NCBI GenBank assembly: GCA_977030845.1
Contig: OZ365119.1
Coordinates: 11,594,001 to 11,658,000, forward strand
Source of the DNA: Fimbriosthenelais zetlandica
Lineage: Eukaryota
Direction of reading: 5' to 3'
Length of the DNA: 64,000 nucleotides
In this document: positions 22,347 through 64,000 of the stretch, in pieces
Layout of the letters: every line of letters begins with the position of its first letter
How positions within the stretch are numbered: the stretch's first letter is position 1
Position numbers and translations under genes: made by a program
Notes under the pieces: model-generated
Seen by the model: only the letters and a program-made list of their open reading frames with translations
Database searches by the model: none
What the model was told of the DNA's origin: nothing

Positions 22347-25300
22347 ATGGCGGCCATCTTGGTCTGCACCTTGGCGGCCATCTTGGTTTCATCTTTCCAT
22401 GGTGAAGCTTCCATCATCTCAGGGGATGACGTCAAAGCAGGAAAAGGTGCTGCAGTAAGTGCAACTCATGTACATTCGTCTTTAATCTTAATTTTTGTTA
22501 ATACCCTACTATGGCATTTTGCACCTTTTATCGCTTACTGGTTAGAACCTGACAATGCCCAGGTTGACAAGTTTGATTGGCTGTTTGTGCCAATTTCAAG
22601 TGACTTTGATGGGATAGCTTTCCTGTGCGCCAGTCACAAATAGCGATAACCAAGCCGGGCAGTCACAAACAGCGATAACGAAGGTCCTGTGACCGGCTGA
22701 AAAGTATAGTTGTAGCAAGTTGTAGACGAAAGCGTGCTGCCATACCGGGAATCGAGCCCAGGACCTCTCACATTGGAAGCGAGTGTTCTAACCACTATAC
22801 CATCCTGACTCACACTTTCTCATTGCTACCCAGATCACCAGACAAGTAAGAGCATAGATGTGAAGGCACTCAAACTAGGGAGGTGGGTCGGGGTGCGAGG
22901 TTAGGATAAAACTAGGTTATGTGGGCGGGTGGGTAGGTGGGTGGGGAAGCTTAGTATGGCCACCAAAGGAAATGAACATGGTCGAGTATAGGCTAATACC
23001 AATTAAAGTGAACTCTGCAGGGAGACAAAAATAGTAGTTTCTTACCATTTTTGATTGGTAAACAGTGTCGGGTATTAACGGGATCAATGACCTCGCCTGG
23101 ATTGGCTCGGCAGGTTAGAGAAAAGCTATTGACTTCGGGCCTGACGGCCCTCAGTCATAGCTTTTCTCTAACCTGCCTCGCCAATCCAGGCGAGGTCATT
23201 AATCCCTAATTATAAAACATCAATATTTTAACACTTTGACAAACCAATTATCAATCATCGAATTCTCTTATCATTTTCTCCTCAGTTTAAAGCAGTGAGT
23301 GATGAAGGTTGTGGAGTGACTAAGACATGTTTCCACCGTCCAGACGACTGTTCTTTACCTCAATGTGATTACTTTATCTCCTGGATGACTAATGGAGATT
23401 ACATCGACTTTGAAGTTACCGGCAAAGTGGACGAGCAGGAATACATTGCTGTGGGCTTTTCAGATGATGGGGCAATGGTGGGTAGCCTTTGAGATTATTG
23501 TGATGCACTCAATCTTGTTTAACATTTCATGAAGTTTTGAACTCACCTTATTTGTTTTTTGTAGTTCTCTGCAGCTACTGTGAATTGTATGCAAGCTTCC
23601 CAAGACACCAGCATGACAATAGTGACGGCTGTGAATGCTGCTATAGGGACGAGGGACAACACTTTCTTAACACCAGTAAGTTGAACTGTTACTTGATGAA
23701 ATATCAAGGATTCTCTGGGAGATCTAGAGTGTTTTAACATCACTTTATTATTGCAGAGTGGACTTGGACTTGACAGAGAGAAATCCGAAGGAGAGAAAGC
23801 AGATGGCCATCTGTCATGTCGGTTCTCCCTCGTTAGATCTGCAGATTTGATCTCTGGAGAGAACAGTGAAGATGCTAAACATTTAGCAGACTTTGACAAC
23901 AATCGTTACCATCCCATCATGGCCAAGGGCGAGTTGGAAAGTAATGGTAAGTACGATTGGGGCATAAGAAGATAAAAAATACTTTGACTGTTTCTTAATA
24001 GTAATATGTTTTGATTTATTATTTGAGTTATTCAATTATTCTCGTTCTAATATTCCTAGGACATTTGCGATATCATGACGATCGTTTTGGAAGTTCAGAG
24101 TCTGTGGATTTCACTGAAGGCATCAAATCAGACATGAGTTCCTTTGCTCAGTTTAAACCAGTGAGTGATGAAGGTTGTGGAGTGACTAAGACATGTTTCC
24201 ACCGTCCAGACGACTGTTCTTTACCTCAATGTGATTACTTTATCTCCTGGACGACTAATGGAGATTACATCGACTTTGAAGTTAGCGGAAAAGTGGAGGA
24301 GCAGGAATACATTGCTGTGGGCTTTTCAGATGATGGGGCAATGGTGGGTACACTTTGATACCATTGTGATGAACTGAATGTTGTTCAGCATTTCCTAAAT
24401 GTTCTAGCTCACCCTATTTGTGTTTTGTAGTTCTCTGCAGCTACTGTGAATTGTATGCAAGGTTCCCAAGACACCAGCCTGACAATAGTGACGGCTGTGA
24501 ATGCTGCTATAGGGACGAGGGACAACACTTTCTTAACACCAGTAAGTTGAACTGTTACTTGGTGAAATATCAAGGATTCTCTGAGAGATCTAGAGTGTTT
24601 CAACATCACTTTATTATTACAGAGTGGACTTGGACTTGACAGAGAGAAATCAGAAGGGGAGAAAGCAGATGGCCATCTGTCATGTCGGTTCTCCCTCGTT
24701 AGATCTGCAGATTTGATCTCTGGAGAGAACAGTGAAGATGCTAAACATTTAGCAGACTTTGACAACAATCGTTACCATCCCATCATGGCCAAGGGAGAGT
24801 TGGAAAGCAATGGTAAGTAATAATGGAACACTAGAAAATACGAAATATTTTGACACTTCCATAACAGTAATAAGTTTTGAGTTAATATTTGAGCTATTCA
24901 ATTCTTCTTTCTCAACTATTTCTAGGACATTTGCGATATCATGACGATCGTTTTGGAAGTTCAGAGTCTGTGGATTTCACTGATGGCATCAAATCAGACA
25001 TGAGTTCCTTTGCTAAGTTTAAACCAGTGAGTGATGAAGGTTGTGGAGTGACTAAGACATGTTTCCACCGTCCAGACGACTGTTCTTTACCTCAATGTGA
25101 TTACTTTATCTCCTGGACGACTAATGGAGATTACATCGACTTTGAAGTTAGCGGAAAAGTGGAGGAGCAGGAATACATTGCTGTGGGCTTTTCAGATGAT
25201 GGGGCAATGGTGGGTAGACTTTGATACCATTGTGATGAACTGAATGTTGTTCAGCATTTCCTAAATGTTCTAGCTCACCCTATTTGTGTTTTGTAGTTCT

Positions 25301-28300
25301 CTGCAGCTACTGTGAATTGTATGCAAGCTTCCCAAGACACCAGCATGACAATAGTGACGGCTGTGAATGCTGCTATAGGGACGAGGGACAACACTTTCTT
25401 AACACCAGTAAGTTGAACTGTTACTTGGTGAAATATCAAGGATTCTCTGGGAGATCTAGAGTGTTTTAACATCACTTTATTATTGCAGAGTGGACTTGGA
25501 CTTGACAGAGAGAAATCCGAAGGAGAGAAAGCAGATGGCCAACTGTCATGTCGGTTCTCCCTCGTTAGATCTGCAGATTTGATCTCTGGAGAGAACAGTG
25601 AAGATGCTAAACATTTAGCAGACTTTGACAACAATCGTTACCATCCCATCATGGCCAAGGGCGAGTTGGAAAGTAATGGTAAGTACGATTGGGGCATAAG
25701 AAGATAAAAAATACTTTGACTGTTTCTTAATAGTAATATGTTTTGATTTATTATTTGAGTTATTCAATTATTCTCGTTCTAATATTCCTAGGACATTTGC
25801 GATATCATGACGATCGTTTTGGAAGTTCAGAGTCTGTGGATTTCACTGAAGGCATCAAATCAGACATGAGTTCCTTTGCTCAGTTTAAACCTGTGAGTGA
25901 TGAAGGTTGTGGAGTGACTAAGACATGTTTCCACCGTCCAGACGACTGTTCTTTACCTCAATGTGATTACTTTATCTCCTGGACGACTAATGGAGATTAC
26001 ATCGACTTTGAAGTTAGCGGAAAAGTGGACGAGCAGGAATACATTGCTGTGGGCTTTTCAGATGATGGGGCAATGGTGGGTAGCCTTTGAGATTATTGTG
26101 ATTCACTCAATCTTGTTTAGCATTTCATGAAGTTTTGAACTCACCTTATTTGTGTTTTGTAGTTCTCTGCAGCTACTGTGAATTGTATGCAAGCTTCCCA
26201 AGACACCAGCATGACAATAGTGACGGCTGTGAATGCTGCTATAGGGACGAGGGACAACACTTTCTTAACACCAGTAAGTTGAACTGTTACTTGGTGAAAT
26301 ATCAAGGATTCTCTGGGAGATCTAGGGTGTTTCAACATCACTTTATTATTACAGAGTGGACTTGGACTTGACAGAGAGAAATCAGAAGGAGAGAAAGCAG
26401 ATGGCCATCTGTCATGTCGGTTCTCCCTCGTTAGATCTGCAGATTTGATCTCTGGAGAGAACAGTGAAGATGCTAAACATTTAGCAGACTTTGACAACAA
26501 TCGTTACCATCCCATCATGGCCAAGGGAGAGTTGGAAAGCAATGGTAAGTAAGAATAGAACATAAGAAGTTAAAAAATATTTTGACAGTTCCATAAAAGT
26601 AGCAAGTTCTGAGTTATTATTTCAGTTATTCAAATGTTCCTTCTCAAATATTTCTAGGACATTTGCGATATCATGACGATCGTTTTGGAAGTTCAGAGTC
26701 TGTGGATTTCACTGAAGGCATCAAATCAGACATGAGTTCCTTTGCTCAGTTTAAACCAGTGAGTGATGAAGGTTGTGGAGTGACTAAGACATGTTTCCAC
26801 CGTCCAGACGACTGTTCTTTACCTCAATGTGATTACTTTATCTCCTGGACGACTAATGGAGATTACATCGACTTTGAAGTTAGCGGCAAAGTGGAGGAGC
26901 AGGAATACATTGCTGTGGGCTTTTCAGATGATGGGGCAATGGTGGGTAGCCTTTGAGTCCATTGTTATGAACTGAATGTTGTTTAGCATTTCCTGAATGT
27001 TCTAACTCACCTTATTTTTGTTTTGTAGTTCTCTGCAGCTACTGTGAATTGTATGCAAGCTTCCCAAGACACCAGCATGACAATAGTGACGGCTGTGAAT
27101 GCTGCTATAGGGACGAGGGACAACACTTTCTTAACACCAGTAAGTTGAACTGTTACTTGATGAAATATCAAGGATTCTCTGGGAGATCTAGAGTGTTTCA
27201 ACATCACTTTATTATTACAGAGTGGACTTGGACTTGACAGAGAGAAATCAGAAGGAGAGAAAGCAGATGGCCAACTGTCATGTCGGTTCTCCCTCGTTAG
27301 ATCTGCAGATTTGATCTCTGGAGATAACAGTGAAGATGCTAAACATTTAGCAGACTTTGACAACAATCGTTACCATCCCATCATGGCCAAGGGAGAGTTG
27401 GAAAGCAATGGTAAGTAAGAATAGAACATAAGAAGTTAAAAAATATTTTGACAGTTCCATAAAAGTAGCAAGTTCTGAGTTATTATTTCAGTTTTTCAAA
27501 TGTTCCTTCTCAAATATTTCTAGGACATTTGCGATATCATGACGATCGTTTTGGAAGTTCAGAGTCTGTGGATTTCACTGAAGGCATCAAATCAGACATG
27601 AGTTCCTTTGCTCAGTTTAAACCAGTGAGTGATGAAGGTTGTGGAGTGACTAAGACATGTTTCCACCGTCCAGACGACTGTTCTTTACCTCAATGTGATT
27701 ACTTTATCTCCTGGACGACTAATGGAGATTACATCGACTTTGAAGTTACCGGCAAAGTGGACGAGCAGGAATACATTGCTGTGGGCTTTTCAGATGATGG
27801 GGCAATGGTGGGTAGACTTTGAGATTATTGTGATTCACTGAATCTTGTTTAGCATTTCATGAAGTTTTGATCTCAACTTATTTGTGTTTTGTAGTTCTCT
27901 GCAGCTACTGTGAATTGTATGCAAGCTTCCCAAGACACCAGCATGACAATAGTGACGGCTGTGAATGCTGCTATAGGGACGAGGGACAACACTTTCTTAA
28001 CACCAGTAAGTTGAACTGTTACTTGATGAAATATCAAGGATTCTCTGGGAGATCTAGAGTGTTTCAACATCACTTTATTATTACAGACTGGACTTGGACT
28101 TGACAGAGAGAAATCAGAAGGAGAGAAAGCAGATGGCCAACTGTCATGTCGGTTCTCCCTCGTTAGATCTGCAGATTTGATCTCTGGAGAGAACAGTGAA
28201 GATGCTAAACATTTAGCAGACTTTGACAACAATCGTTACCATCCCATCATGGCCAAGGGAGAGTTGGAAAGTAATGGTAAGTACGATTGGGGCATAAGAA

Positions 28301-31300
28301 GATAAAAGATACTTTGTCTGTTTCTTAATAGTAATATGTTTTGATTTATTATTTGAGTTATTCAATTCTTCTTTCTCAACTATTTCTAGGACATTTGCGA
28401 TATCATGACGATCGTTTTGGAAGTTCAGAGTCTGTGGATTTCACTGAAGGCATCAAATCAGACATGAGTTCCTTTGCTCAGTTTAAACCAGTGAGTGATG
28501 AAGGTTGTGGAGTGACTAAGACATGTTTCCACCGTCCAGACGACTGTTCTTTACCTCAATGTGATTACTTTATCTCCTGGACGACTAATGGAGATTACAT
28601 CGACTTTGAAGTTAGCGGCAAAGTGGAGGAGCAGGAATACATTGCTGTGGGCTTTTCAGATGATGAAAATATGGTGGGTAGACTTTGAGTCCATTTTACT
28701 TAATTCAATGCATTTTGTCACGTATTGGAGATTGCTTCTCAACTTATTTTCTTTGTTTAGTATTCTGCAGCTACTGTGAATTGTCTGCAAGCTTCCCAAG
28801 GCACCAGCATGACAATAGTGACGGCTGTGAATGCTGCTAAAGATATGAGGGGCAACACTTTCTTAACCCCAGTAAGTTGAACTGTTACTTGGTGAAATAT
28901 CAAGGATTCTCTGGGAGATCTAGAGTGTTTCAACATCACTTTATTATTACAGAGTGGACTTGGACTTGACAGAGAGAAATCAGAAGGAGAGAAAGCAGAT
29001 GGCCAACTGTCATGTCGGTTCTCCCTCGTTAGATCTGCAGATTTGATCTCTGGAGAGAACAGTGAAGATACTGAACATTTAGCAGACTTTGACAACAATC
29101 GTTACCATCCCATCATGGCCAAGGGAGAGTTGGATAGTAATGGTAAGTAGAACTGAAGAGAAAGTAGGCAATGGAAAGCAAAGGTGACTTTTATCTTTCC
29201 TCTTATTCTGAAATATTTTTGGACCTGTGTCACTATAATTTAATAATTCATGTATTGCCTTTCAAAGTTCCCTTCTGTATAATTTCAGGACATTTGAAAT
29301 ACCATGGCTTCAGCAACCGTTTTGGAAGTCCAATTTCTGTGAATTTCACTAAAGGCTTCAAATCAGACGTGAGTCCCTGCCATCCTTGTTCCTTGGCTTT
29401 TCTCGTTCACCTTATGTTGAATAAATCGCTATAGATTTAATGTAGTGAGCTTTATTATAACACAAACCTTGACTTTCCCCTCAGTTTAAACCAGTGAGTG
29501 ATGAAGGTTGTGGAGTGACTAAGACATGTTTCCACCGTCCAGACGACTGTTCTTTACCTCAATGTGATTACTTTATCTCCTGGACGACTAATGGAGATTA
29601 CATCGACTTTGAAGTTAGCGGCAAAGTGGAGGAGCAGGAATACATTGCTGTGGGCTTTTCAGATGATGAAAATATGGTGGGTAGACTTTGAGTCCATTTT
29701 ACTTAATTCAATGCATTTTGTCACGTATTGGAGATTGCTTCTCAACTTATTTTCTTTGTTTAGTATTCTGCAGCTACTGTGAATTGTCTGCAAGCTTCCC
29801 AAGACACCAGCATGACAATAATGACGGCTGTGAATGCTGCTAAAGATATGAGGGGCAACACTTTCTTAACACCAGTAAGTTGAACTGTTACTTGGTGAAA
29901 TATCAAGGATTCTCTGGGAGATCTAGAGTGTTTCAACATCACTTTATTATTACAGAGTGGACTTGGACTTGACAGAGAGAAATCAGAAGGAGAGAAAGCA
30001 GATGGCCAACTGTCATGTCGGTTCTCCCTCGTTAGATCTGCAGATTTGATCTCTGGAGAGAACAGTGAAGATGCTAAACATTTAGCAGACTTTGACAACA
30101 ATCGTTACCATCCCATCATGGCCAAGGGAGAGTTGGATAGTAATGGTAAGTAGAACTGAAGAGAAAGTAGGCAATGGAAAGCAAAGGTGACTTTTATCTT
30201 TCCTCTTATTCTGAAATATTTTTGGACCTCTGTCACTATAATTTAATAATTCATGTATTGCCTTTCAAAGTTCCCTTCTGTATAATTTCAGGACATTTGA
30301 AATACCATGGCTTCAGCAACCGTTTTGGAAGTCCAATTTCTGTGAATTTCACTAAAGGCTTCAAATCAGATGTGAGTCCCTGCCATCTTTGTTCCTTGGC
30401 TTTTCTCGTTCACCTTATGTTGAATAAATCGCTATAGATTTAATGTAGTGAGCTTTATTATAACACAAACCTTGACTTTCCCCTCAGTTTAAACCAGTGA
30501 GTGATGAAGGTTGTGGAGTGACTAAGACATGTTTCCACCGTCCAGACGACTGTTCTTTACCTCAATGTGATTACTTTATCTCCTGGACGACTAATGGAGA
30601 TTACATCGACTTTGAAGTTAGCGGCAAAGTGGAGGAGCAGGAATACATTGCTGTGGGCTTTTCAGATGATGAAAATATGGTGGGTAGACTTTGAGTCCAT
30701 TTTACTTAATTCAATGCATTTTGTCACGTATTGGAGATTGCTTCTCAACTTATTTTCCTTGTTTAGTATTCTGCAGCTACTGTGAATTGTCTGCAAGCTT
30801 CCCAAGACACCAGCATGACAATAATGACGGCTGTGAATGCTGCTAAAGATATGAGGGGCAACACTTTCTTAACACCAGTAAGTTGAACTGTTACTTGGTG
30901 AAATATCAAGGATTCTCTGGGAGATCTAGAGTGTTTCAACATCACTTTATTATTACAGAGTGGACTTGGACTTGACAGAGAGAAATCAGAAGGAGAGAAA
31001 GCAGATGGCCATCTGTCATGTCGGTTCTCCCTCGTTAGATCTGCAGATTTGATCCCTGGAGAGAACAGTGAAGATGCTAAACATTTAGCAGACTTTGACA
31101 ACAATCGTTACCATCCCATCATGGCCAAGGGAGAGTTGGATAGTAATGGTAAGTAGAACTGAAGAGAAAGTAGGCAATGGAAAGCAAAGGTGACTTTTAT
31201 CTTTCCTCTTATTCTGAAATATTTTTGGACCTGTGTCACTATAATTTAATAATTCATGTATTGCCTTTCAAAGTTCCCTTCTGTATAATTTCAGGACATT

Positions 31301-34300
31301 TGAAATACCATGGCTTCAGCAACCGTTTTGGAAGTCCAATTTCTGTGAATTTCACTAAAGGCTTCAAATCAGATGTGAGTCCCTGCCATCTTTGTTCCTT
31401 GGCTTTTCTCGTTCACCTTATGTTGAATAAATCGCTATAGATTTAATGTAGTGAGCTTTATTATAACACAAACCTTGACTTTCCCCTCAGTTTAAACCAG
31501 TGAGTGATGAAGGTTGTGGAGTGACTAAGACATGTTTCCACCGTCCAGACGACTGTTCTTTACCTCAATGTGATTACTTTATCTCCTGGACGACTAATGG
31601 AGATTACATCGACTTTGAAGTTAGCGGCAAAGTGGAGGAGCAGGAATACATTGCTGTGGGCTTTTCAGATGATGAAAATATGGTGGGTAGACTTTGAGTC
31701 CATTTTACTTAATTCAATGCATTTTGTCACGTATTGGAGATTGCTTCTCAACTTATTTTCCTTGTTTAGTATTCTGCAGCTACTGTGAATTGTCTGCAAG
31801 CTTCCCAAGACACCAGCATGACAATAATGACGGCTGTGAATGCTGCTAAAGATATGAGGGGCAACACTTTCTTAACACCAGTAAGTTGAACTGTTACTTG
31901 GTGAAATATCAAGGATTCTCTGGGAGATCTAGAGTGTTTCAACATCACTTTATTATTACAGAGTGGACTTGGACTTGACAGAGAGAAATCAGAAGGAGAG
32001 AAAGCAGATGGCCAACTGTCATGTCGGTTCTCCCTCGTTAGATCTGCAGATTTGATCTCTGGAGAGAACAGTGAAGATGCTAAACATTTAGCAGACTTTG
32101 ACAACAATCGTTACCATCCCATCATGGCCAAGGGAGAGTTGGATAGTAATGGTAAGTAGAACTGAAGAGAAAGTAGGCAATGGAAAGCAAAGGTGACTTT
32201 TATCTTTCTTCTTATTCTGAAATATTTTTGGACCTCTGTCACTATAATTTAATAATTCATGTATTGCTTTTCAAAGTTCCCTTCTGTATAATTTCAGGAC
32301 ATTTGAAATACCATGGCTTCAGCAACCGTTTTGGAAGTCCAATTTCTGTGAATTTCACTAAAGGCTTCCAATCAGATGTGAGTCCCTGCCATCTTTGTTC
32401 CTTGGCTTTTCTCGTTCACCTTATGTTGAATAAATCACTATAAACTTAATGTAGTTAGCTTTATTATAATACAAACCTTGACTTTCCCCTCAGTTTAAAC
32501 CAGTGAGTGATGAAGGTTGTGGAGTGACTAAGACATGTTTCCACCGTCCAGACGACTGTTCTTTACCTCAATGTGATTACTTTATCTCCTGGACGACTAA
32601 TGGAGATTACATCGACTTTGAAGTTAGCAGCAAAGTGGAGGAGCAGGAATACATTGCTGTGGGCTTTTCAGATGATGGGGCAATGGTGGGTAGCCTTTGA
32701 GTCCATTGTAAGTAATTCAATGCATTTTGTGACGTATTGGAGATTGCTTCTCAACTTATTTGTACATGTATTTTGTAGTTCTCTGCAGCTACTGTGAATT
32801 GTATGCAAGCTTCCCAAGACATCAACATGACAATACTGACGGCTGTCAATGCTGCTATAGGGACGAGGGGCAACACTTTCTTAACACCAGTAAGTTGAAC
32901 TGTTACTTGGTGAAATATCAAGGATTCTCTGGGAGATCTAGAGTGTTTCAACTTCACTTTATTATTACAGAGTGGACTTGGACTTGACAGAGAGAAATCA
33001 GAAGGTGAGAAAGCAGATGGCCAACTGTCATGTCGGTTCTCCCTCGTTAGATCTGCAGATTTGATCTCTGGAGAGAACAGTGAAGATGCTAAACATTTAG
33101 CAGACTTTGACAACAATCGTTACCATCCCATCATGGCCAAGGGAGAGATGGAAAGCAATGGTAAGTGGGACTAAGGAGAAAAGGGGGAAGGGAAAGCGAA
33201 AAGTAACTTGTATCAACCCCTGAGAAAATAGTTGCAGGTTCAGAGATTTTCTACCTCTGTCACTATATTTTCTTAATCCATGTATCACATTTCAAGCTTC
33301 CTTTAATTCCCTTACACTTTTCAGGACATTTGAAGCATCATGATGATAGTTTTGGAAGTTCTATGTCCGTGAATTTCACTGAAAGCATCACCTCCGATGT
33401 GAGTCCCAGTCATCTTCATTCCTGTCTTTTCCCAAAAATCTCAAAGGTCTATAAATTATTCTAAGCTGTAGCTTACTACCCATCTTGACTTTTTATCAGC
33501 TGTTCTAGCACTGATCAGTGAGATAATAGTAGAACAGCCAAGGCCTGAAAAAGGCTTTATTTTGGGAGGTACCGTGCATGAAATAATAACATATAACAAG
33601 TGTTATATACCAAATGAAAGCTCTCAGCTATAAGGATCCAGGTAATATAATTGTTTGTCTTGTAGTTCCAGCCAGTAACCACGAGTGAATGCGGTAAGAG
33701 TAAGAGCTGTTTCAGACATCCTGCTAACTGTGAACCAGGTAACTGTGGTTACCTCGTCACCTGGAAAGTGAACGGAGATTACGTCGACTTTGAGTTGACT
33801 GGACCCACGGACAACACCAAGCAATACATCGCTCTAGGCTTCTCCTCCCATGGCAAGATGGTCAGCTTCATCTACACTTTAACAGAGTTCTATCTTAAAG
33901 CAACTATATGAATCTCTGTCCAGTTTTCTGGATTTATATGGGTTGTCCACCGGATGATGGGATTTTAGGTTGTCGTGATTCCGGAAAACTATGCAGTTAG
34001 CAGTAATATGGTTTTGGAATATGCCGTATTGCATTATTCTCAGTCAAAATTGTCAACAAAACCATTTAAATATCTATCATAAAGCAAAATACTCAGTCAT
34101 TGCCCTAAACTAAGTATCCTGGGGCTTCTTTCACAAGAAAGCGTTAGCCTACGGTTATGAAACAGGCCCCAAGTTTAGGGCAAGGACTATATCTATCTGT
34201 CTCACTTTGTTTCCAGTACACAGCACCTGTGGTGAACTGTATGCTGAATACCACTAGAGGAACTATTTGGGTGGCTTCAGCTGAGAACACAGACGCTCCT

Positions 34301-37300
34301 GCTAACAAGATTCTCTCACCGGTCAGTATCTCCCAGGCTACAGCTATCATTCTCCCACATTGACCATAGAAACAGGTGCGCCTACTCATCTTTTGCAGCT
34401 CTAAATGCTGACTCATAAATGATGATCAGCTGCAAAAGATGAGTTGGCGCACCTTGTATAGTTAGACAATGATTAGAAAAATCATGTAAATGTGGAAATA
34501 GATATAGTAGGAGACATCTTTGTGCTCCGAATTAGAAACATTATCAAGAAAGACAGTTCAAACATTTCTGATGAAGATCGTTTAGATATTTTTAATTTCC
34601 CTTTGCTGGATTAGTCTGACTTGGGACAGAAGTTGAACGCGTCATCAGGCGGGATGGTAGATGGTCAGATCTCGTGTAGGTTTTCTTATGTCAAGACTAA
34701 ACCTGTCGTACCTGAGACTGCTGTCCTACGTCCAGTCCTCTCCTTCCCTTATGACACCTACCTCAGTGATGACCGAGCCGCCGTCGCTGACCTGTCACAG
34801 CCCTGTCACCTCATCATGGCTAAAGGTCACGTCCAGTCAGGTACTCTTCACTTCCTATCTCCCTCTTGTACAATTAACTCTGCACCTGCACCTGCACAAA
34901 GGCTTACAGAGGCGACATTCCCTGATATGTAGACTTCCTATTCCAGGTAGCATAGTTTACCACGGCCCGGACAAGCTGGCGTCGGTTGACAAGTATAACT
35001 TAGATTCTCCAGTCTTCATCAATGTCGGGGGAGTCACCAAGAACACCCTCGTTCAGATTCATGGTAGGTTTTGGTTTTTTTTAGCTTCTATAAAAAGATG
35101 ACTGCTCCATTCCATTTTTAAACTGGCTGTAGTCCTTGAAAATCAACTTTATTGTAGAAATTCATCATTAAATGCCTTTAAGCCTGTCAGTGTGTTGATT
35201 GTTCACAGGTAGTCTCATGGTTGTTGCCTGGATGTTGCTGGCGGGGACGGGCATCCTCCTGCCTCGATACTTTAAACCCGCCTGGCCCAGTAAAACACTC
35301 CTCGGCAAACAAGTCTGGTTCCCTGTGAGCACAAAAATAACCCATACTCCCCAAACTTCTACCATCTTTCTATTGTCTTTCCTTTATAAGATAGACGTGA
35401 TTTCCTTTGTTCTATTTCTTCTCTTAAAATGCTTTACTCGAAATGTCTTTGAAAGAATTAATTTCTTTTTGGGTGGTGACGAGTTTGTGGCTGTAATACA
35501 TTTGTTTTGTCATACAGGTTCATGTCAGTCTGATGGTCTCTGCCTTCCTCCTCTCACTCTCATCTTTCATCATAATCTTTGTCCATGTTGGAGGATTCTC
35601 ATCGGTACGATACAGTCTATAAATACATAATAAAGATTGTATAATTATTAAGATGATTTTTTTTAGATTCTCCTGTCATTCAACTGCTAAACTATGATGT
35701 AAATGTCTTATGTTTTTCAGATGGATTTTTATCCTGACCAGGTCCATCCTATTCTGGGTATTATCACCATCTGTCTGGCTACTATCAATGTAAGTTGAGG
35801 CTCTCTACCACTTCATCTCGTAACTCTACAATTCCCGCTCTTCTTGTGTAACTTCTGGACCTCTCGCTGGCCTGCTCTTGTTCAGGTTTCTCTCGCTGCT
35901 AGCCTAGCGATGGCTTGGTGAACCTTCCGAATATCTTAGCTGTAGCACACGAGTTTGGGACAAGTTCATGTCAGTTACTGTATATTTATTTCTGTTTTTT
36001 TTTAGCCTGTTATGGGACTTTGAGATGTGACCCTGGTTCTATATTTCTATTTTTTTAGCCTGTTATGGGACTTTGAGATGTGACCCTGGTTCTATATTTC
36101 TGTTTTTAGCCTGTTATGGGACTGTTGAGATGTGATCCTGGTTCTATATTTCTGTTTTTAGCCTGTTATGGGACTGTTGAGATGCGATCCTGGTTCTATA
36201 TTTCTGTTTTTAGCCTGTTATGGGACTGTTGAGATGTGACCCTGGTTCTATATTTCTGTTTTTTTAGCCTGTTATGGGACTGTTGAGATGTGATCCTGGT
36301 TCTATATTTCTGTTTTTTTAGCCTGTTATGGGACTGTTGAGATGTGATCCTGGTTCTATATTTCTGTTTTTTTAGCCTGTTATGGGACTGTTGAGATGTG
36401 ACCCTGGTTCTATATTTCTGTTTTTTAGCCTGTTATGGGACTGTTGAGATGTGATCCTGGTTCTATATTTCTGTTTTTAGCCTGTTATGGGACTGTTGAG
36501 ATGTGACCCTGGTTCTATATTTCTGTTTTTTTAGCCTGTTATGGGACTGTTGAGATGTGACCCTGGTTCTATATTTCTGTTTTTTTAGCCTGTTATGGGA
36601 CTGTTGAGATGTGACCCTGGTTCTATATTTCTGTTTTTTTAGCCTGTTATGGGACTGTTGAGATGTGATCCTGGTTCTATATTTCTGTTTTTAGCCTGTT
36701 ATGGGACTGTTGAGATGTGATCCTGGTTCTATATTTCTGTTTTTAGCCTGTTATGGGACTTTGAGATGTGATCCTGGTTCTATATTTCTGTTTTTTTAGC
36801 CTGTTATGGGATTGTTGAGATGTGACCCTGGCTCCAGACATCGTCCGATATTTAATGTGGCTCATGCATCTGTTGGACAATGTGCCTTCCTAGGCGGAGG
36901 TGAGTGGTCACGGATAACTCATGTTTTTCTTTGTCAATGTCGACATGTGTGACGCGATCCTTTGCTTCTCTTGAAGCATCCGTCAGACTATAAGGGCCGT
37001 CCATCGTCTGTTATTGTGATTATTATGTTTTCAGCTGCTAACATCTTGATCGCCATGTTTATGAGTCAGACTAATGTTGCTGACTACAGTCGGTGGGTGG
37101 TTGTGGGTTACATCGCCTGGCATATAATCACTGAGCTCACTCTACTCATTCTATATCTCCTTCAAAACGACGCCACAGAGAGTAAGCCACTCTTACATTG
37201 TACAAACAATTCTCTATTGAACAAGTTGCCTTAAACTGCTTGAAACGAATCCAGAGAAAAGATGATAAATTGCCATTGACTATCTTTTGTTATTTTCAGG

Positions 37301-37842
37301 TTCATATAATTTTGCTAAAGATGTCGAAGTTGAAAAAGAATCGGGGGTAAGTAACATAAATCTTCTTGTAAGTTTTTATTCAATCTTGGAAATGTGAAAA
37401 GTGTGGAAACTGTTTTAAATGATATTAAATGATTGTATGGAGGTGAAGCATGCTGTCAGATGTCACATATACAGTACTCTCAGTTGGTATGTAATATCTA
37501 TATCAGGGTATTCCAATGGTGTCCAGTGGTTTAAGCGACCATGTGCTTGTCACACCATCACCGCAGCCTCTCATACTGGTGCGTGTACTCTACACCAGGG
37601 CCCGTTACATCACTCATTGTCTCTAACAATGGTTTATATAACAGGCCCAGCTCTTTACTTTAGTGCTTCTCTTCATGGGACAATTCGGTGGAGGCAAACC
37701 TTTACTTTTCCATAAATGTTAAAAGACGTTTTGGTTTTGTTTACAGGCTCCATATTCAACCCTTCAGTCGACCATCTTGTGCGTCTATGTTGTCGGGGCT
37801 CTCAGTTTTGCCATAGTTATCATCGTTTCTATAGTAACATAA
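22347..37842 (+). CDS. Multi-DOMON / cytochrome b561 ferric-chelate reductase-like protein (FRRS1/SDR2 family; signal peptide + 12 DOMON + b561, no Reeler seen), about 2,600 aa
   Basis: Signal-peptide exon 22347-22454. First module exons A 23286-23477, B 23565-23675, C 23757-23946, D from 24060. The module repeats 11 times to 33398. Divergent DOMON exons 33666-33860, 34217-34321, 34615-34840, 34947-35063. b561 and tail exons 35209-35324, 35518-35604, 35721-35789, 36800-36899, 37035-37181, 37300-37346, 37747-37842. Motifs: CGxTKxC, YIAVGFSDDxxM, CRF, YH; b561 His residues in IHGSLM, VHVSLM, VHPILG, AHASVG. Confidence 0.9.
22738..22809 (-). pseudogene. tRNA-like sequence (tRNA-derived SINE head or tRNA pseudogene) antisense in intron 1 of the reductase gene
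   Basis: Minus strand reads GTCAGGATGGTATAGTGGTTAGAACACTCGCTTCCAATGTGAGAGGTCCTGGGCTCGATTCCCGGTATGGCA. A box, anticodon arm (loop TTCCAAT, CCA) and B-box/T arm are present. The acceptor stem pairs poorly. Confidence 0.6.
23080..23206. repeat. Near-perfect long hairpin (about 55-bp arms)
   Basis: GGGATCAATGACCTCGCCTGGATTGGCTCGGCAGGTTAGAGAAAAGCTATTGACT pairs with AGTCATAGCTTTTCTCTAACCTGCCTCGCCAATCCAGGCGAGGTCATTAATCCC. Confidence 0.9.
23286..33398 (+). repeat. Intragenic tandem array of 11 DOMON-encoding genomic units (period 866 bp x6, then 1003 bp x4)
   Basis: The repeated A-exon ORFs end at 23492, 24358, 25224, 26090, 26956, 27822, 28688, 29691, 30694, 31697 and 32700. Introns are duplicated together with exons. 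Confidence 0.97.
34374..34454. repeat. Hairpin / mini-MITE (27-bp arms) in reductase intron
   Basis: AGGTGCGCCTACTCATCTTTTGCAGCT ... AGCTGCAAAAGATGAGTTGGCGCACCT. Confidence 0.85.
35985..36832 (+). repeat. About 53-55-bp minisatellite made of the 3' splice junction of the PVMGLLRCDPG exon (about 15 decoys plus the real acceptor at 36799)
   Basis: Unit TTCTATATTTCTGT(T)nAG|CCTGTTATGGGACTGTTGAGATGTGACCCTGG. The last copy continues as the real exon. Confidence 0.93.
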
Positions 37843-42830: not shown

Positions 42831-43901
42831 TTAGAAGTATGAAGCATAGATTTCAGTGTTGCTATCCTGGCTGCTATTTCCATTACTTTCTCTCTCTTCA
42901 GTTTCTTTCTTTTTACAAAGTCCGCACAGAGAACAGAAGGTCTGTGTGACTGCGCGCCTGTATCTGGGGATGAACATGGCATACACAAAAGGATTAGCGC
43001 ACGAGTTAAACACAGACAACCAGACGCCTATCTTTTGTTCGGGCGAGTTTAGAACATAAGTAATGAGTTTGAGATTACCCAGTAAATAGTACCAGCAGTC
43101 GTAGCCGAGGGCTATAAAGAATATCACCGTCACTGTGAAGGCAGTCTTGGTCAACTCTGTGGTCGCCTTGTCTATCACCTGCCTCTCCCCTGCTACATGA
43201 AGATCAGGACACCTTTTTCTTTTTTGGAAAGTCCAGATCACTCTCCCATAAAAATAGATAAAGAAAGTACAAGGGATGATGTAGTAGTTGATGAAGATGG
43301 TGAAGCCAAAGATGAGGAAGAACCAGTCAGCTGATGGGCCATCCCACAGATGTTCACTGTAGCACTGGCCATCCTCCCTCATGCGAGTCTGGAGAAAACT
43401 CCCCACGTTACACACAAACGCCAGCACATACACCACCCCGACCAACCTGCGCACCCTGGTCCTGGTGAAAGCTTGGAATCTAAATGGTCTACAAACACAG
43501 AGGTACCTGTCATAGGCGATGAGTATAATGTTATATACTGAGACATAGACGGCCACCCAGTACAAACCCTGACCATGCCAGATATTACATATAAAGTCAT
43601 CCAACCCATCCACCCCGGGCACCCAGTGACAAGGTGCGACAAGAATGATACCAGCAAAGACGCACACCACGGCGTCTACTGCCGACTGGTGTGTGAGGAG
43701 GGTCACTATGGTTACACCCAGGTTATCACCATGCTTCATTAACGTCACCAGCGTCCCTGTGTTGGCAAGGAAGCCGATGAGAGTCATGACTAATTGACTC
43801 TGATCCAATATGACATTTAGTAGATTGAATTCACTGCTTGATTTAGAGCAGTGTGTGCCCGCTTCCTCATCCTCCATGCTTGCATTTGTGTAGGATTCCA
43901 T
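42831..43901 (-). CDS. Intronless class A (rhodopsin-like) GPCR, peptide/orphan-receptor-like, 356 aa
   Basis: Single ORF with seven hydrophobic segments, TM1 AN, TM2 D (SAVD), TM3 Cys and AYDRY, ECL2 Cys, TM5 YYIIP, TM7 NSCANPFVY, and an N-terminal glycosylation sequon. Confidence 0.95.
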   Translation of the reverse strand: MESYTNASMEDEEAGTHCSKSSSEFNLLNVILDQSQLVMTLIGFLANTGTLVTLMKHGDNLGVTIVTLLTHQSAVDAVVCVFAGIILVAPCHWVPGVDGLDDFICNIWHGQGLYWVAVYVSVYNIILIAYDRYLCVCRPFRFQAFTRTRVRRLVGVVYVLAFVCNVGSFLQTRMREDGQCYSEHLWDGPSADWFFLIFGFTIFINYYIIPCTFFIYFYGRVIWTFQKRKRCPDLHVAGERQVIDKATTELTKTAFTVTVIFFIALGYDCWYYLLGNLKLITYVLNSPEQKIGVWLSVFNSCANPFVYAMFIPRYRRAVTQTFCSLCGLCKKKETEERESNGNSSQDSNTEIYASYF

Positions 43902-48200: not shown

Positions 48201-51200
48201 TGGAAGAGCTATATACGGAAGGCTATAAATAAATAAATGAAACTCATACTCAGGCAAAAATGTCAAATATTTTCTGTTTATTTTTGCAGATTCTGAGATT
48301 GAAATGCTGCAGCAGAAAGTGGCGAAACTGACGGAGGAGAACCTACGATATACCGAGGCCCTGAAAACAGGAGGTGAGTGCTCTATTTTATTTATTTATT
48401 TATTTGTACATAATGACAAGAAGAATACAATAACAGCCTTTCATACAACTTGCATACCATTAAGACTTTGACCACCCATCTCTAAATGAGTGCCGATATG
48501 AATTAGTAATTACTATGACATAAGTAGGGATATCATTCTGGGGGGGGGGGGGGGGGATAGAGTGGGGATGGGGGTGGAGGAGGAGTGCACTTCGATAACA
48601 AAGCAGCACAGCTCATCAGTTAGTCCATTAATTAATTCTTAGGAAAAAAACATGTCTTTCTGCTCTATACAAGTAGTCTTATGGTTGTCTGTATTTATTG
48701 TAGTCCCTGGCTCCCAGACTAACAATTTAGCAGCTCTAGAAATGCTACAATTGTAAATATTATAAATATTTTGTAATTATAAATACCTTTTTTTTTGTAG
48801 TGACGCCTGATTTGATAGCTGACTGGAAGGGGAAGTCCCGACCTGCACCAGACTCCCCCACCGACCTCACCACACCCACGACTGATCCTAGTAAAGAATC
48901 AAAGAAACGTAGCAAAGGAAACACGGTACGGGAACATCTCAAACTAGGCGGTGGTCCCAACGATGCCGGGTTTGTGTCTGTGGGGAGTAATTCCGGATTA
49001 ATGAACCCTAACGGATTATTGAAGCCTTCAGGAGGAGACGGGGCGAGTCCAGTCTCACTGTCCCAGGTATCAGGACTAGTACTACCTACAGGAGTAGTGG
49101 CCCCCTCACCGACTACTGATAGTAGTAGTAATAAGATGATGCTACCAGCACCCACCACCACTACATCACCCTACATGATGCCAGCACCCACCACCACGAC
49201 TACTACATCACCCTACATGATGCCAGCACCCACCACCACGACTACTACATCACCCTACATGATGCCAGCACCCACCACCACCACCACTACATCACCCTAC
49301 ATGATGCCATCACTACTACACAATGCTGGTCAAGCGTCCAGTCCACTACTCAACCTCCCTCTCACCCCCGGACCTACCCCCACCCCCACCTCCTTCAATG
49401 TCCCGGGGGTGGGGCCAGTACAGGGGAACCTGGTACTACAGAATGGTCAGCTTATATTGATGAACAGTGACTTGACGTCAGCTGCCATGGCTGCCGCCGG
49501 AATAATGAACCCCCCGACCACGGACACCACGACGTTACCAACAGATGACGTCCACGACACGACCAGCGTGTCCTCCCCCGCCCCGCCCAATAATAAAACT
49601 GACCATCACAGTGACGCGAGTGACGCGGATTCACTGACTATAAACACGACTACAGTGGACGGACTACCCGTGTCCACTCTACCTAACGTCACCTCCAACA
49701 TGGTTAATACACCACCTGGTGGTCAAGCTGTGTCCACTGTGTCCACCCCCACCCTGCCTGTCCCCACCCCTACCCTCCCTGTCCCCACCCCTACCCTCCC
49801 TGTCCAGTCACCACTAATTCACCCTTCTTCTGTATCCACCTCCACCCTGCCCGCCCAGTCACCACTTATAAACCCGTCAACCCCCTCCACCCTGCCCGCC
49901 CAGTCACCCCTCATCCTGCCTGGGCAGAACCCTGGGCTGTCAGTCTTCCCCCAGCAGCAGGCCCAGATGACTTACATGACTCCCCAGGGTCAACTAGTCA
50001 GTCTACCCCACAACTTACACTCCAACCCCTCTACCCCCAACATCCTCAACACCCTCAACACCACCACACTCCCCAACAACCTGCCCAGCGCACTCCTACT
50101 GCCCAATGGTCAAGTGGTACCAGTGGTCACTCAACCATCGCTGCTCTTCTCACAGAGTGGTAGTACTGTCACACACATGTCAGCACCCACGACCAGTGTA
50201 CTAGGCAAGCCTCAGCTACCTAGTGTCCAACCATTGTCCATGGCGGCTGGACTAGGGGGTGGGTTACTGATGTCCACTACACCTACCACCCCTACCACCA
50301 AACTGACCAGTACTAAGGTACCTACACTGACTAATGTCCACCCCGGCCAGACGTCCACAGCCATACAACTGACAGGTATGTCACAGTCAATTCACAGCTC
50401 TCTGTTGTTGATGATTATTTAGGTGTAGGTGTTAATTAAGTGTTATGTTTTGTTGATGTAGATTTAAGCCTATAGTTAAGATCGTTACTCTTTATTTAAC
50501 AGCCGGAGCCTCGCCTGCCTGGACATCGTCTGATGCTGTCAGTTCCCCTGTCACCACACTGTCAGTGTCACAGCCCAGTGTCACTAGTGTCACGTACAGT
50601 CACATACATCCCACCACGACAGCCGCGCCAGCTACCACCACCACATGTGTCAATGTGCTACCACCAACACTCACCTCACAGACTGTCAGTGGTAGCACAG
50701 CTCCACCTAACGCTGTCATTAACAAGGCAGGCCACGTGACACTACAAGGTTCACAGGTGGGGGGTGGTGGTACAGGGAAGGCAGGCAGCCTACCACCCAC
50801 CATGACAGCTGTAGTGTCAGCTGATGGGTCTATAGTGCTCACACTACCTCAGGGTTCTCAGCCTGGTGGATTCATGTTGGATGCTAACACTATACCGTCC
50901 CTGTTACCAGGACTAGCTGCACCTACCCCCACCCCCACCCAGGTCAGTACAGGCGGCAAGAACAAGAAGAAGGGTGGACAACGGGCACTGCGACCCAAAC
51001 CACCGGACGCCATCTCTGTAGCTCCTGTAATGAACACTGTAGCCCAGCCTGTAATGAGCACTGTAGCCCAGACAAAATGGCTGACCACCGTACCTGCTGC
51101 CACCACGACCACAGACAGTTCACACGACAAGGTCAAGGATGCTGGTCAAGTCCTCAGCTCATCTGAGGTGGTCACTTCACCCCTCTCTATCGTTACCACA

Positions 51201-63200: not shown

Positions 63201-64000
63201 GTACAACACCATGATGGGGAATATACCATGTCTCTCCTGGTTTACCTTCTTCAGGAGCCAGTGAAGCTTCTTCGTTATGCAACATTTTATTCATGAAACT
63301 CGTGTAATCATCTCTGTATGTGGAAGTTTGAAATTTCTTTTTTAGATGTGACAGTCTTGTATTTGCCAATTGAAAGTTGTTCGGCAGTTTTGGTCGTTCT
63401 CTAAATGGCAATGACGTTTCATAATGACCCTTTTCATTTGGTTTTATTGTTTTTTCTAGGGTATCGATAAACTGAATGTCCTCCTGGGAAACCTTGGTAA
63501 CTTGATGTTTAGTGTCATTGAAGTCTGTTTCTAAGAGTTTCAAGACATCTTGGGGTGTGACCGCTGGACACTCTTGAACAGAAACACGATGACATGTAGC
63601 TGCGTTTGATTCCTCTTCATGATGTGTGCCGATGACTCCCCAACCTAGATCAGTCTTGATGCCAAAGGGCTCATATTCTTGGCCCTTTATTATTTCTGTT
63701 GGTAGAAGAGCTTGGCTGCAGTTATAGCCTATGAGGAGGCCGATGGGACATTCCAAATAAGGTGGTACCTTATCAATGAGTGACTTGAGATGGTCCCATC
63801 CTGCGACGGTCTCTCTTGTGGGAATATTTCTGGCATCAAATGGGATGGTGTGTCTGGTGTAAGCGGGGGGAAGATGAATGATCTTTCTTGATGTGTATCC
63901 TCGAATTTGTAAGTTGCTAATGCGATTGCTTTTCACTTCTGAGTTTTTATTTAGCACGGTTGTTAGTTTGAGTTTTACTGGCTCTCCCTCTATATCCCAG
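60241..64000 (-). mobile_element. BEL/Pao LTR retrotransposon polyprotein (protease-region remnant, RT, RNase H-like/Peptidase A17, integrase, C-terminal DUF5641-like), 5' part outside window
   Basis: Uninterrupted ORF of at least 1238 aa. Motifs: WYIPHHGV, RVVFDCSA, LNDHLLTGP, FGASSSP, FYVDD, YDPLGFL, TIPRLEL, HHCC (H..IRH..C..C), DCFGP, CDQGSNF, GVWER, WSRWRKEYL. Confidence 0.97.

What the first reader, a model, noticed from the sequence alone, without database searches (positions are those of the whole stretch)
23286..35063. Twelve-DOMON extracellular array on a cytochrome b561 anchor: candidate multi-heme electron-relay ferric reductase
Seen: a signal peptide, 11 near-identical 191-195-aa DOMON modules, one divergent DOMON and a six-helix b561 domain with all four His. 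Every exon I translated was open and phase-consistent. Every module keeps the Met of SDDxxM (SHGKM in the last) and the C-terminal His (YH, or HH in unit 11). Established: heme-binding DOMONs use a Met/His pair, and animal FRRS1/SDR2 typically carries Reeler + one DOMON + b561. Inference: this protein could display up to 12 b-hemes outside the cell, fed with electrons through the membrane b561. That would be a long redox arm or heme/ligand sponge, and I do not recall such an architecture being described.
Basis: partly seen in the sequence, partly recalled or inferred. Interest (0 to 1): 0.85.

Follow-up and report, generated by a model that had tools for sequence, protein, structure and literature searches.

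The report
Twelve-DOMON cytochrome b561 membrane reductase
This invertebrate gene very probably encodes a cell-surface iron-reductase relative whose outer haem-binding module has been copied twelve times in a row, the longest such chain I found, although shorter chains of five to eight modules already sit unnamed in databases for a brittle star, two bivalves and unidentified eukaryotes.

Summary
A 50-exon model (22347-37842, + strand, 2,593 aa) has no in-frame stop, and all splice sites are GT..AG. It encodes an N-terminal hydrophobic signal segment, eleven near-identical DOMON modules (195 aa x6, 191 x4, 189 x1), one divergent membrane-proximal DOMON, and a six-helix cytochrome b561 domain.

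All 12 modules keep the Met/His pair that ligates haem b in haem-type DOMONs. The b561 part keeps four His that are conserved in 45-46 of 46 relatives.

All eleven genomic units differ from one another, by 4-138 substitutions. Exons are about ten times more similar than introns 1 and 3. So this is neither a simple assembly stutter nor a set of decaying exons.

The claim of uniqueness is only partly right. Proteins with 5-8 DOMONs plus b561 exist in Amphiura, Pecten, Solemya and unidentified eukaryotes, and an ascidian protein has many DOMONs but no detected b561. All are uncharacterised. Their arrays arose by separate lineage-specific expansions, and 154 of 161 modules keep Met and His.

Twelve is the most I saw. 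The only paper found that counts DOMONs calls two uncommon in insects.

A two-module AlphaFold model shows a disordered 17-residue linker. The array is therefore better pictured as a flexible chain of redox beads than as a rigid haem wire.

It is a new variant of the CYBDOM/FRRS1 family.

The parts
22347..22454 (+). Exon 1: start codon, hydrophobic signal segment (MAAILVCTLAAILVSSFHG) and a short spacer. It ends in phase 0.
   Evidence: An in-frame TAA lies two codons upstream of the ATG, and the donor is GTAAGT. The Kyte-Doolittle peak is 1.96 for residues 1-19. The exon joins in frame to the exon at 23286.
23286..28481 (+). DOMON modules U1-U6. Each is 195 aa and occupies an 866-bp genomic unit. 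Each unit has three exons (284, 111 and 190 nt; the first exon of U1 is 192 nt).
   Evidence: Repeat families; splice sites; translation. Units differ by 22-63 substitutions per 866 bp. Pfam DOMON on the exon at 24062-24343 gives E 3.1e-09.
28482..32377 (+). DOMON modules U7-U10. Each is 191 aa and occupies a 1003-bp unit. Each has four exons because an extra 116-nt intron is kept before the FKPVSDEG exon.
   Evidence: Units differ by only 4-17 substitutions per 1003 bp, so these are the youngest copies and their number is the least certain.
32494..33398 (+). DOMON module U11 (189 aa). It is a mosaic of the two unit types, with KHH at the His position.
33666..35063 (+). Divergent membrane-proximal DOMON U12 (about 210 aa, 36% identical to U11, four exons). 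Its last exon runs into b561 helix 1 and holds the first haem His (codon 35060-35062).
   Evidence: Pfam DOMON on exon 33666-33860 gives E 9.5e-09. Met is at 33858-33860 and His at 34961-34963. In the module tree U12 is sister to U1-U11.
35209..37842 (+). Cytochrome b561 domain in seven exons, with six hydrophobic helices. The conserved His codons are at 35521, 35745 and 36863, plus 35060 in the previous exon. The stop codon is at 37840-37842.
   Evidence: BLASTP of U12 plus b561 against relatives aligns to the very C-terminus, for example 30% identity over 444 aa to Branchiostoma FRRS1 (P0042, E 3e-63). phmmer with the b561 part alone gives E down to about 1e-38. The aligned part of P0001 is a Pfam Cytochrom_B561 hit. 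Four conserved His. Six hydrophobic segments.
35987..36831 (+). A 54-bp unit repeated about 16 times, inside the intron before exon 36800-36899. Each copy repeats the acceptor site plus roughly the first 36 nt of that exon. Only the last copy is used in the model.
   Evidence: TRF and sequence read. A 54-nt copy read in the exon frame ends in TAG.

Best explanation
This is a real gene for a plasma-membrane protein of the CYBDOM family (FRRS1/SDR2-like, but without a Reeler domain). In this family cytosolic ascorbate reduces the inner b561 haem, which would here be held by His2414 and His2486. The electron then crosses the membrane to the outer b561 haem (His2373 and His2450), and from there reaches the haem b of the membrane-proximal DOMON, U12.

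Eleven further haem-type DOMONs hang beyond U12 on flexible linkers of about 17 residues. I propose that each binds one haem b through its Met/His pair. I propose that they are charged by transient docking of solvent-exposed haem edges, from neighbour to neighbour or by folding back onto U12. This is the way the mobile cytochrome domain of cellobiose dehydrogenase works.

On this reading the array is a long, multivalent, multi-electron reducing brush for extracellular acceptors. The likeliest acceptors are Fe(III) chelates or colloids. Cu(II) and oxidised matrix components are possible alternatives.

The array grew by unequal crossing-over of a 3-4-exon module whose flanking intron phases let whole modules be added or skipped in frame.

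Shown here: the architecture, the ligand residues, the constraint on exons, and recurrence in other phyla. Inferred: haem occupancy, relay between modules, the substrate, and inclusion of all 12 modules in one mRNA.
For: - Gene model: open reading frame with consensus splice sites throughout.
- Domain identity: Pfam DOMON hits on single exons.
- Fold: a module of the closest relative (48% identical to the first exon of a window module, pLDDT 89) matches the DOMON of human FRRS1 (TM 0.81, rmsd 2.4 A), and in the PDB matches the DBH DOMON and the haem-b cytochrome domain of cellobiose dehydrogenase.
- Ligands: Met/His are present in all 12 modules and in 154 of 161 modules of relatives.
- Disulfides: six Cys are near-invariant, as expected for an extracellular domain.
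- b561 domain: four conserved His. Conserved Arg/Lys fall on the loops that my topology inference places on the cytosolic side.
- Constraint: within U1-U6 the exons differ by 0.6-1.7%, but introns 1 and 3 differ by 14-17%.
- Age: P0004 and P0021 share modules one-to-one, so a multi-module array has been kept through speciation.
- Experimental precedent: a plant CYBDOM (HYP1) carries ascorbate-driven trans-membrane electron transport. Mutating the outer His pair abolishes it. Its DOMON is modelled with a Met90/His174 haem about 21 A from the outer b561 haem (PMC10784544).
Against: - No RNA or protein data were available.
- AlphaFold predicts no fixed contact between modules (linker pLDDT below 50, pTM 0.51). 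Adjacent haems could therefore be tens of angstroms apart most of the time.
- The window's modules have lost the acidic GxD that follows the Met in the insect and vertebrate motif SXDXXMGXD. They read MFSA or MYSA (PMC10691727).
- pN/pS among modules is only 0.3-0.8, on small counts.
- Part of the exon similarity is gene conversion: intron 2 is as similar as the exons.
- RefSeq models for the brittle-star relative include isoforms that are exactly 195 aa shorter. Shorter products are therefore likely here too.
Confidence: 0.5

Rival explanations
1. Only the membrane-proximal DOMON (U12) is coupled to the b561 haems. U1-U11 act as a stalk, spacer, or binding or adhesion array. They may or may not hold haem, and electrons do not reach them.
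For: U12 is the only divergent module, and it is sister to all the others, as expected if it alone is specialised for docking on b561. The linker between modules is predicted to be disordered and pTM is 0.51. FRRS1L, a DOMON-only protein with no b561 domain, is among the best fold matches.
Against: A pure spacer has no need for Met and His, yet 154 of 161 modules across phyla keep both, including modules only 30-45% identical to each other. PMC10691727 reports that the pair is lost in the sugar-binding and DBH DOMONs.
Confidence: 0.2
2. The genomic array overstates the protein. Whole modules are skipped in splicing, or copy number varies between individuals, so the usual product has far fewer than 12 DOMONs.
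For: Each module is a set of exons flanked by introns of matching phase, so whole modules can be skipped in frame. The RefSeq isoforms of the Amphiura relative are 1459 and 1264 aa, a difference of 195 aa, which is about one module. U7-U10 differ by only 0.4-1.7%, so unequal exchange is recent and probably continuing.
Against: All exons of all units are intact, with consensus splice sites, and they are far more conserved than introns 1 and 3. Exons that are never used should decay. The 6-8-module relatives P0021, P0054 and P0004 are single open reading frames. P0021 and P0054 lie on contigs barely longer than their coding sequence, which suggests transcripts or intron-free DNA.
Confidence: 0.15
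3. The chemistry is the same but the job is different. The array supplies electrons to an extracellular matrix process, such as redox cross-linking or maturation of shell, cuticle or tube proteins, rather than to iron uptake.
For: FRRS1-like Reeler/DOMON proteins are abundant in abalone nacre matrix, where a redox role in cross-linking was suggested (PMC6003135). A putative ferric-chelate reductase 1 is among the strictly mantle-specific transcripts of a snail (PMC5995198).
Against: Those proteins have Reeler domains and a single DOMON, which is a different architecture. The expression site of this gene is unknown.
Confidence: 0.1
4. It is an assembly artefact or a dead gene.
For: Tandem arrays are prone to mis-assembly, and U7-U10 are nearly identical. 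No protein at 50% identity or above exists in the libraries for comparison.
Against: Every pair of units differs, by 4-138 substitutions. The whole array is about 10 kb, short enough for a single long read to span. There is no stop codon or broken splice site in 50 exons.
Confidence: 0.05

Closest known systems
Unnamed multi-DOMON b561 proteins of other marine invertebrates: Amphiura filiformis XP_072017628 (6 DOMONs), Pecten maximus XP_033740429 (7), Solemya velum KAL5022071 (7), and an ENA eukaryotic contig protein P0004 (7-8). Phallusia mammillata CAB3247152 has 6-8 DOMONs with no b561 detected.
   Same: Signal segment, tandem haem-type DOMONs with Met/His and six Cys, no Reeler domain, and a C-terminal b561. 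Pecten also has near-identical distal modules (up to 98%) plus one divergent proximal module (38%). The Pecten module is likewise split into four exons of similar sizes.
   Different: At most 44% identical to the window's query exon. They have 5-8 modules against 12 here. The arrays expanded separately in each lineage. None has been characterised or, as far as I could find, discussed in a paper.
Animal FRRS1/SDR2 and its insect orthologue CG8399
   Same: DOMON plus b561, with the SxDxxM Met and the C-terminal His. The DOMON fold matches at TM 0.81 and rmsd 2.4 A. In vitro ferric-reductase activity has been reported for SDR2 and CG8399 (PMC10691727).
   Different: FRRS1 has a Reeler domain and one DOMON. 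Two DOMONs occur in only 19 of 888 insect CYBDOMs (PMC10691727). This protein has no Reeler domain and 12 DOMONs. The GxD after the Met is missing.
Plant CYBDOM proteins HYP1 and CRR
   Same: One polypeptide with an extracellular DOMON haem and two b561 haems. Ascorbate-driven electron export and ferric reduction have been shown experimentally (PMC10784544, PMC10784552).
   Different: They have a single DOMON and a five-helix b561 domain, and they belong to a distant lineage.
Cytochrome domain of cellobiose dehydrogenase (PDB 1D7B, 4QI7)
   Same: The same beta-sandwich fold, and a haem b ligated by Met and His (PMC10691727). It is a mobile haem domain on a flexible linker that shuttles electrons by docking. 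This is the working model I propose for transfer between modules.
   Different: It is fungal and secreted, has one domain, is fed by a flavin domain, and has no membrane anchor.
Bacterial multihaem outer-surface conduits (MtrC and OmcS type; from my own knowledge)
   Same: Many haems displayed outside the cell to reduce extracellular acceptors.
   Different: Those use covalently bound c-type haems (CXXCH) packed a few angstroms apart in a rigid chain. Here there are b-type haems, one per 190-aa domain, joined by disordered linkers. The resemblance is an analogy only.

Membership tests
CYBDOM (cytochrome b561 plus DOMON proteins) | At least one DOMON domain (Pfam PF03351) on the non-cytoplasmic side | tested here: met
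   DOMON hits above the gathering score on single exons. My HMM built from the window's own modules recovers 12 modules in the model. A relative's module has the FRRS1 DOMON fold.
CYBDOM (cytochrome b561 plus DOMON proteins) | A cytochrome b561 core with four haem-ligating His on four consecutive helices | tested here: met
   Six hydrophobic helices. His2373, 2414 and 2450 are invariant in 46 of 46 relatives, and His2486 in 45 of 46. The domain aligns to the part of P0001 that Pfam calls Cytochrom_B561. Pfam could not be run directly on the window's b561 domain because its exons are 16-49 codons long and the spliced protein has no reference.
CYBDOM (cytochrome b561 plus DOMON proteins) | Haem-type DOMON: a Met in the SxDxxM loop and a His in the last strand | tested here: met
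   12 of 12 modules have both. The columns were checked against 161 modules of relatives.
CYBDOM (cytochrome b561 plus DOMON proteins) | Bound haem b and ascorbate-dependent trans-membrane electron transfer | not testable with these tools
   This needs expression and spectroscopy or electrophysiology, as was done for HYP1 (PMC10784544).
FRRS1/SDR2 orthologue group (Reeler-DOMON-b561) | An N-terminal Reeler domain | tested here: not met
   The signal exon splices directly to the first DOMON exon. No open reading frame in the 831-nt first intron was a candidate for a further exon, judged by eye and not by a Pfam scan. The relatives with six or more DOMONs scanned show no Reeler hit either.
FRRS1/SDR2 orthologue group (Reeler-DOMON-b561) | The full SXDXXMGXD motif, with the acidic residues proposed as a metal pocket | tested here: inconclusive
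   SDDGAM and SDDENM fit SXDXXM, but the following residues are FSA or YSA, not GXD (motif from PMC10691727). The Amphiura relative keeps an Asp at Met+4.
Rigid multihaem electron wire | Fixed close packing of neighbouring haems (edge-to-edge within tunnelling range) | tested here: inconclusive
   The two-module AlphaFold model has a linker (residues 175-191) with pLDDT below 50 and pTM 0.51, so no defined interface is predicted. The tool returns no coordinates, and haem is not modelled.

The most novel reading that the evidence does not exclude
Some marine invertebrates carry an ascorbate-powered extracellular electron conduit. In this reading, a flexible chain of up to 12 b-haem DOMON domains passes electrons from module to module over tens of nanometres. 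That would let an animal cell reduce particulate or colloidal Fe(III)/Mn oxides, or matrix-bound acceptors, that a single-DOMON reductase cannot reach. It would be a eukaryotic, b-haem counterpart of bacterial multihaem outer-surface cytochromes, evolved repeatedly by module amplification.
Probability: 0.2. Interest if true: 0.85.

Novelty: new variant of a known kind. Interest (0 to 1): 0.5.

Why it matters
The in vivo role of animal FRRS1-type reductases is still unknown. Plant CYBDOMs were shown to be ascorbate-driven ferric reductases only in 2024.

A natural series of 1 to 12 haem-type DOMONs on the same membrane anchor is a ready-made experiment. The arrays expanded separately in several phyla, and the haem ligands are kept in nearly every module. 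One can therefore ask what the extracellular haem domain does, and whether haem domains on flexible tethers can relay or store electrons outside an animal cell.

The locus also records how such arrays grow: 866- and 1003-bp exon-set units, in-frame loss of an intron, and mosaic gene conversion.

Tried and rejected
1. The spliced protein or a whole window module could not be given to Pfam, AlphaFold or the homology tools, because it has no contiguous reference and I did not type long sequences. I used single exons and the closest relatives instead. The structure models are therefore of Amphiura modules, not of the window's own.

2. Pfam on the short b561 exons gave nothing. Homology was shown through relatives instead.

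3. Sequence searches of the PDB, with P0001's C-terminal part and with a 29-row module profile, gave no significant hit. Only the fold search worked.

4. A word-index search with the 94-aa exon found no close fragment. So neither this species nor a near relative appears to be in that collection for this gene.

5. P0005, P0012 and P0014, which showed 23, 11 and 13 matched 'stretches', are not multi-DOMON b561 proteins. Two have no DOMON hit at all, P0012 has only a sub-threshold one, and none has b561. I left them out.

6. An alternative splice pair (donor seven nt downstream, acceptor at CTGCAG) is also in frame, but it gives five residues between the Met and the next Cys. All relatives have seven, so I rejected it.

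7. I tried to name the organism and find a syntenic orthologue through the intronless GPCR at 42831-43901. The hits were unnamed, and one ENA contig had no DNA held and no DOMON neighbour. The metagenome scaffold that holds P0010 is only 1.5 kb.

8. Asard 2013, Verelst & Asard 2003 and Iyer 2007 are not held in the library. I therefore cannot exclude that one of them mentions multi-DOMON architectures.

9. The 119-aa minus-strand ORFs repeated in each unit are antisense read-through of exon B, intron 2 and exon C. They are not genes.


Full report
**What is in the sequence**

The region is an intron-containing animal gene. It lies between a Na/K-ATPase alpha gene upstream and, on the other strand downstream, what looks from its ORF translations like an SLC22-type transporter.

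A direct-repeat scan finds 11 copies of one unit. Start-to-start spacing is 866 bp for the first seven copies and 1003 bp for the last four, or 1003-1009 bp depending on the register used.

Reading the sequence and locating the splice junctions unit by unit gave a 50-exon model, 22347..37842 on the + strand.
- The CDS is 7,782 nt and the protein is 2,593 aa.
- There is no in-frame stop.
- All introns are GT..AG and are 81-1010 nt long.

Exon 1 (22347-22454) starts at an ATG with an in-frame TAA two codons upstream. It encodes a 19-residue hydrophobic segment, the only hydrophobic segment before residue 2360.

Then come eleven modules of 195 aa (U1-U6), 191 aa (U7-U10) and 189 aa (U11), followed by a divergent module U12 (about 210 aa, 36% identical to U11). 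The C-terminal domain has six hydrophobic helices.

The signal exon lies outside that range, and so does all of the b561 domain except the start of its first helix.

**Domain identity**

Pfam DOMON scores above its gathering cut-off on single exons that hold only the first third of the domain. The U2 exon gives E 3.1e-09 and the U12 exon gives E 9.5e-09.

The b561 exons are too short to score alone. The spliced protein has no contiguous reference, so I could not submit it.

BLASTP of U12 plus the C-terminal domain aligns end to end with relatives. It matches Branchiostoma FRRS1 at E 3e-63 and the Amphiura protein at 35% identity and E 4e-51. The aligned part of the Amphiura protein is a Pfam Cytochrom_B561 hit.

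In an alignment of 46 b561 domains, His2373, His2414 and His2450 are invariant, and His2486 is present in 45 of 46. Conserved Arg/Lys lie on two of the loops between helices. I infer those loops are cytosolic, because the first helix follows an extracellular DOMON.

On that topology, His2373/2450 hold the outer haem and His2414/2486 hold the inner one. This is the same pairing as shown for Arabidopsis HYP1 (PMC10784544).

**Haem ligands**

Every module ends its first exon with the Met of SDDGAM or SDDENM (SSHGKM in U12). Every module has the C-terminal His 106 residues later, or 116 in U12.

PMC10691727 reports three relevant facts:
- This Met/His pair corresponds to the haem ligands of the cellobiose dehydrogenase cytochrome domain.
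- It is universally conserved in animal CYBDOM DOMONs.
- It is absent from sugar-binding DOMONs and from DBH.

Across 161 complete modules of the relatives and the window, 154 keep both residues. Six Cys are near-invariant. That includes arrays whose modules are only 30-45% identical to one another.

One difference from the published motif SXDXXMGXD: the window's modules read MFSA or MYSA after the Met, so the acidic GXD is gone.

**Is the array real and functional?**

All pairs of genomic units differ:
- U1-U6 differ by 22-63 substitutions per 866 bp.
- U7-U10 differ by 4-17 substitutions per 1003 bp.
- The two unit types differ by more than 100 substitutions.

A simple assembly stutter is therefore unlikely. 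The number of U7-U10-type copies is the least certain point.

Divergence is strongly uneven along the unit. Within U1-U6, exons differ by 0.6-1.7%, while introns 1 and 3 differ by 14-17%. Intron 2 is as similar as the exons.

Constraint on exons and local gene conversion therefore both act. Synonymous divergence is about four times lower than mean intron divergence (binomial p = 5e-05). I cannot fully explain this. pN/pS is 0.3-0.8 on small counts.

The 866-bp units differ from the 1003-bp units by loss of a 116-nt intron. In the short units it is reduced to 18 nt read as MSSFAQ.

**Relatives**

An exhaustive phmmer search of 1.84 billion representative proteins with the longest exon found 367 hits. 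None was above 44% identity apart from short fragments, so this gene has no close relative in the libraries. A word-index search also found none.

Many hits have several matched stretches. Counting modules with an HMM of the window's modules, and b561 with phmmer, the numbers of long hits with b561 were:

| DOMONs | Hits |
|---|---|
| 1 | 11 |
| 2 | 23 |
| 3 | 9 |
| 4 | 2 |
| 5 | 4 |
| 6 | 6 |
| 7 | 2 |
| 8 | 1 |

The counts for 5 and 6 DOMONs include several Amphiura isoforms. The window's own model has 12.

The proteins with six or more modules are listed below. Module counts from Pfam and from my HMM differ by one or two for some of them.

| Protein | Source | DOMONs | b561 |
|---|---|---|---|
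| XP_072017628 | Amphiura filiformis | 6 (isoforms with 5) | yes |
| XP_033740429 | Pecten maximus | 7 | yes |
| KAL5022071 | Solemya velum | 7 | yes |
| P0004 | unidentified eukaryote | 7-8 | yes |
| P0021 | unidentified eukaryote | 6 | yes |
| P0054 | unidentified eukaryote | 6 | yes |
| CAB3247152 | Phallusia mammillata | 6-8 | not detected |

Where they are named at all, the names are 'uncharacterized' or 'putative ferric-chelate reductase 1'.

Three hits with 11-23 'stretches' turned out not to be multi-DOMON b561 proteins.

A maximum-likelihood tree of 65 modules groups modules by species. All 12 window modules form one clade (100/98), with U12 as sister to the rest. So the arrays expanded separately, or were homogenised, in each lineage. 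By contrast, P0004 and P0021 share modules one-to-one, which shows an old array kept through speciation.

Pecten repeats the window's pattern. It has near-identical distal modules (up to 98%) plus a divergent proximal one (38%). Its module is split into four exons of sizes similar to those of the window's 1003-bp units.

**Literature**

Full-text searches found no paper on arrays of more than two DOMONs. The insect survey calls two DOMONs uncommon: 19 of 888 proteins (PMC10691727). Three older key papers are not held in the library, so this gap is not proven.

**Structure**

An AlphaFold model of one Amphiura module (pLDDT 89, pTM 0.86) matches the DOMON of human FRRS1 at TM 0.81 and rmsd 2.4 A. 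In the PDB it matches the DBH DOMON and the haem-b cytochrome domains of cellobiose and pyranose dehydrogenases.

A two-module model has confident domains but a 17-residue linker with pLDDT below 50, and pTM 0.51. No fixed packing between modules is predicted.

The picture is beads on a string. My own estimate of its reach is several tens of nanometres.

**Mechanism and verdict**

The best reading is an ascorbate-driven trans-membrane reductase of the CYBDOM family whose outer haem domain has been amplified. U12 would take electrons from the outer b561 haem. In HYP1 the modelled distance between the corresponding iron atoms is about 21 A (PMC10784544).

The distal modules could be charged only by transient docking of exposed haem edges, as in cellobiose dehydrogenase. 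They would act as a multivalent, multi-electron reducing brush.

That every module keeps the ligands, in several phyla, favours redox-active modules over a passive stalk. The flexible linkers and the absence of any RNA or protein data keep the relay an inference.

Shorter isoforms are likely, because whole modules can be skipped in frame and the Amphiura models include forms 195 aa shorter.

A role in extracellular matrix redox chemistry rather than iron uptake is possible (PMC6003135, PMC5995198).

My confidence by claim:

| Claim | Confidence |
|---|---|
| Real multi-DOMON CYBDOM gene | about 0.9 |
| Haem in most modules | about 0.65 |
| Relay between modules | about 0.4 |

**Novelty**

This is a new variant of a known family, not a new kind of system. 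Unnamed relatives with 5-8 modules are already in public databases. Twelve modules is the largest number among the 150 best hits.

Noticed in passing
window 35987-36831: A 54-bp unit is repeated about 16 times in the intron before b561 exon 36800-36899. Each copy carries the polypyrimidine tract, the AG acceptor and roughly the first 36 nt of the exon. A 54-nt copy read in the exon frame ends in TAG, so using a decoy acceptor would truncate the protein.
   Followed up: partly
window 24134-24151 and the same position in the other 866-bp units: The 116-nt intron of the 1003-bp units (GTGAGT...CAG) is reduced to 18 nt (ATGAGTTCCTTTGCTCAG) in the short units. There it is read in frame as MSSFAQ. 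This is intron loss by internal deletion plus a donor mutation.
   Followed up: yes
window 23286-33160 (array units): Divergence along the unit is mosaic. Between the two unit types, intron 1 differs by 36% and intron 3 by 43%, but intron 2 differs by only 1.9% and the exons by 2-9%. Synonymous sites are about four times less diverged than the mean of the introns. Exon-centred gene conversion or selection on exon nucleotides could explain this, but it is not resolved.
   Followed up: partly
window 42831-43901 (- strand): An intronless 356-aa rhodopsin-family GPCR (Pfam 7tm_1, E 2.5e-21). Its closest database relative is 72% identical and unnamed.
   Followed up: partly
window 60241-63957 (- strand): A 1238-aa ORF of a BEL/Pao-type LTR retrotransposon, with Peptidase_A17, weaker reverse-transcriptase and integrase zinc-binding matches, and DUF5641.
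   Followed up: partly
window 48800-56690 (+ strand): Two long ORFs (540 aa and 2041 aa) in a stretch with G+C 0.48-0.57 and strongly negative GC skew. Neither has a Pfam hit.
   Followed up: partly
window 23090-23215 and 22690-22800 (intron 1): A palindrome of about 120 bp that looks like a miniature inverted-repeat element, and a stretch that looks like a reverse-complemented tRNA-derived element. Both were judged by eye only.
   Followed up: no
L001 1-1169 (Pecten maximus LR736842.1): The gene next to the Pecten 7-DOMON b561 gene, on the opposite strand, also encodes a DOMON protein (462 aa, cut off by the end of the locus). DOMON genes may therefore be clustered there.
   Followed up: no
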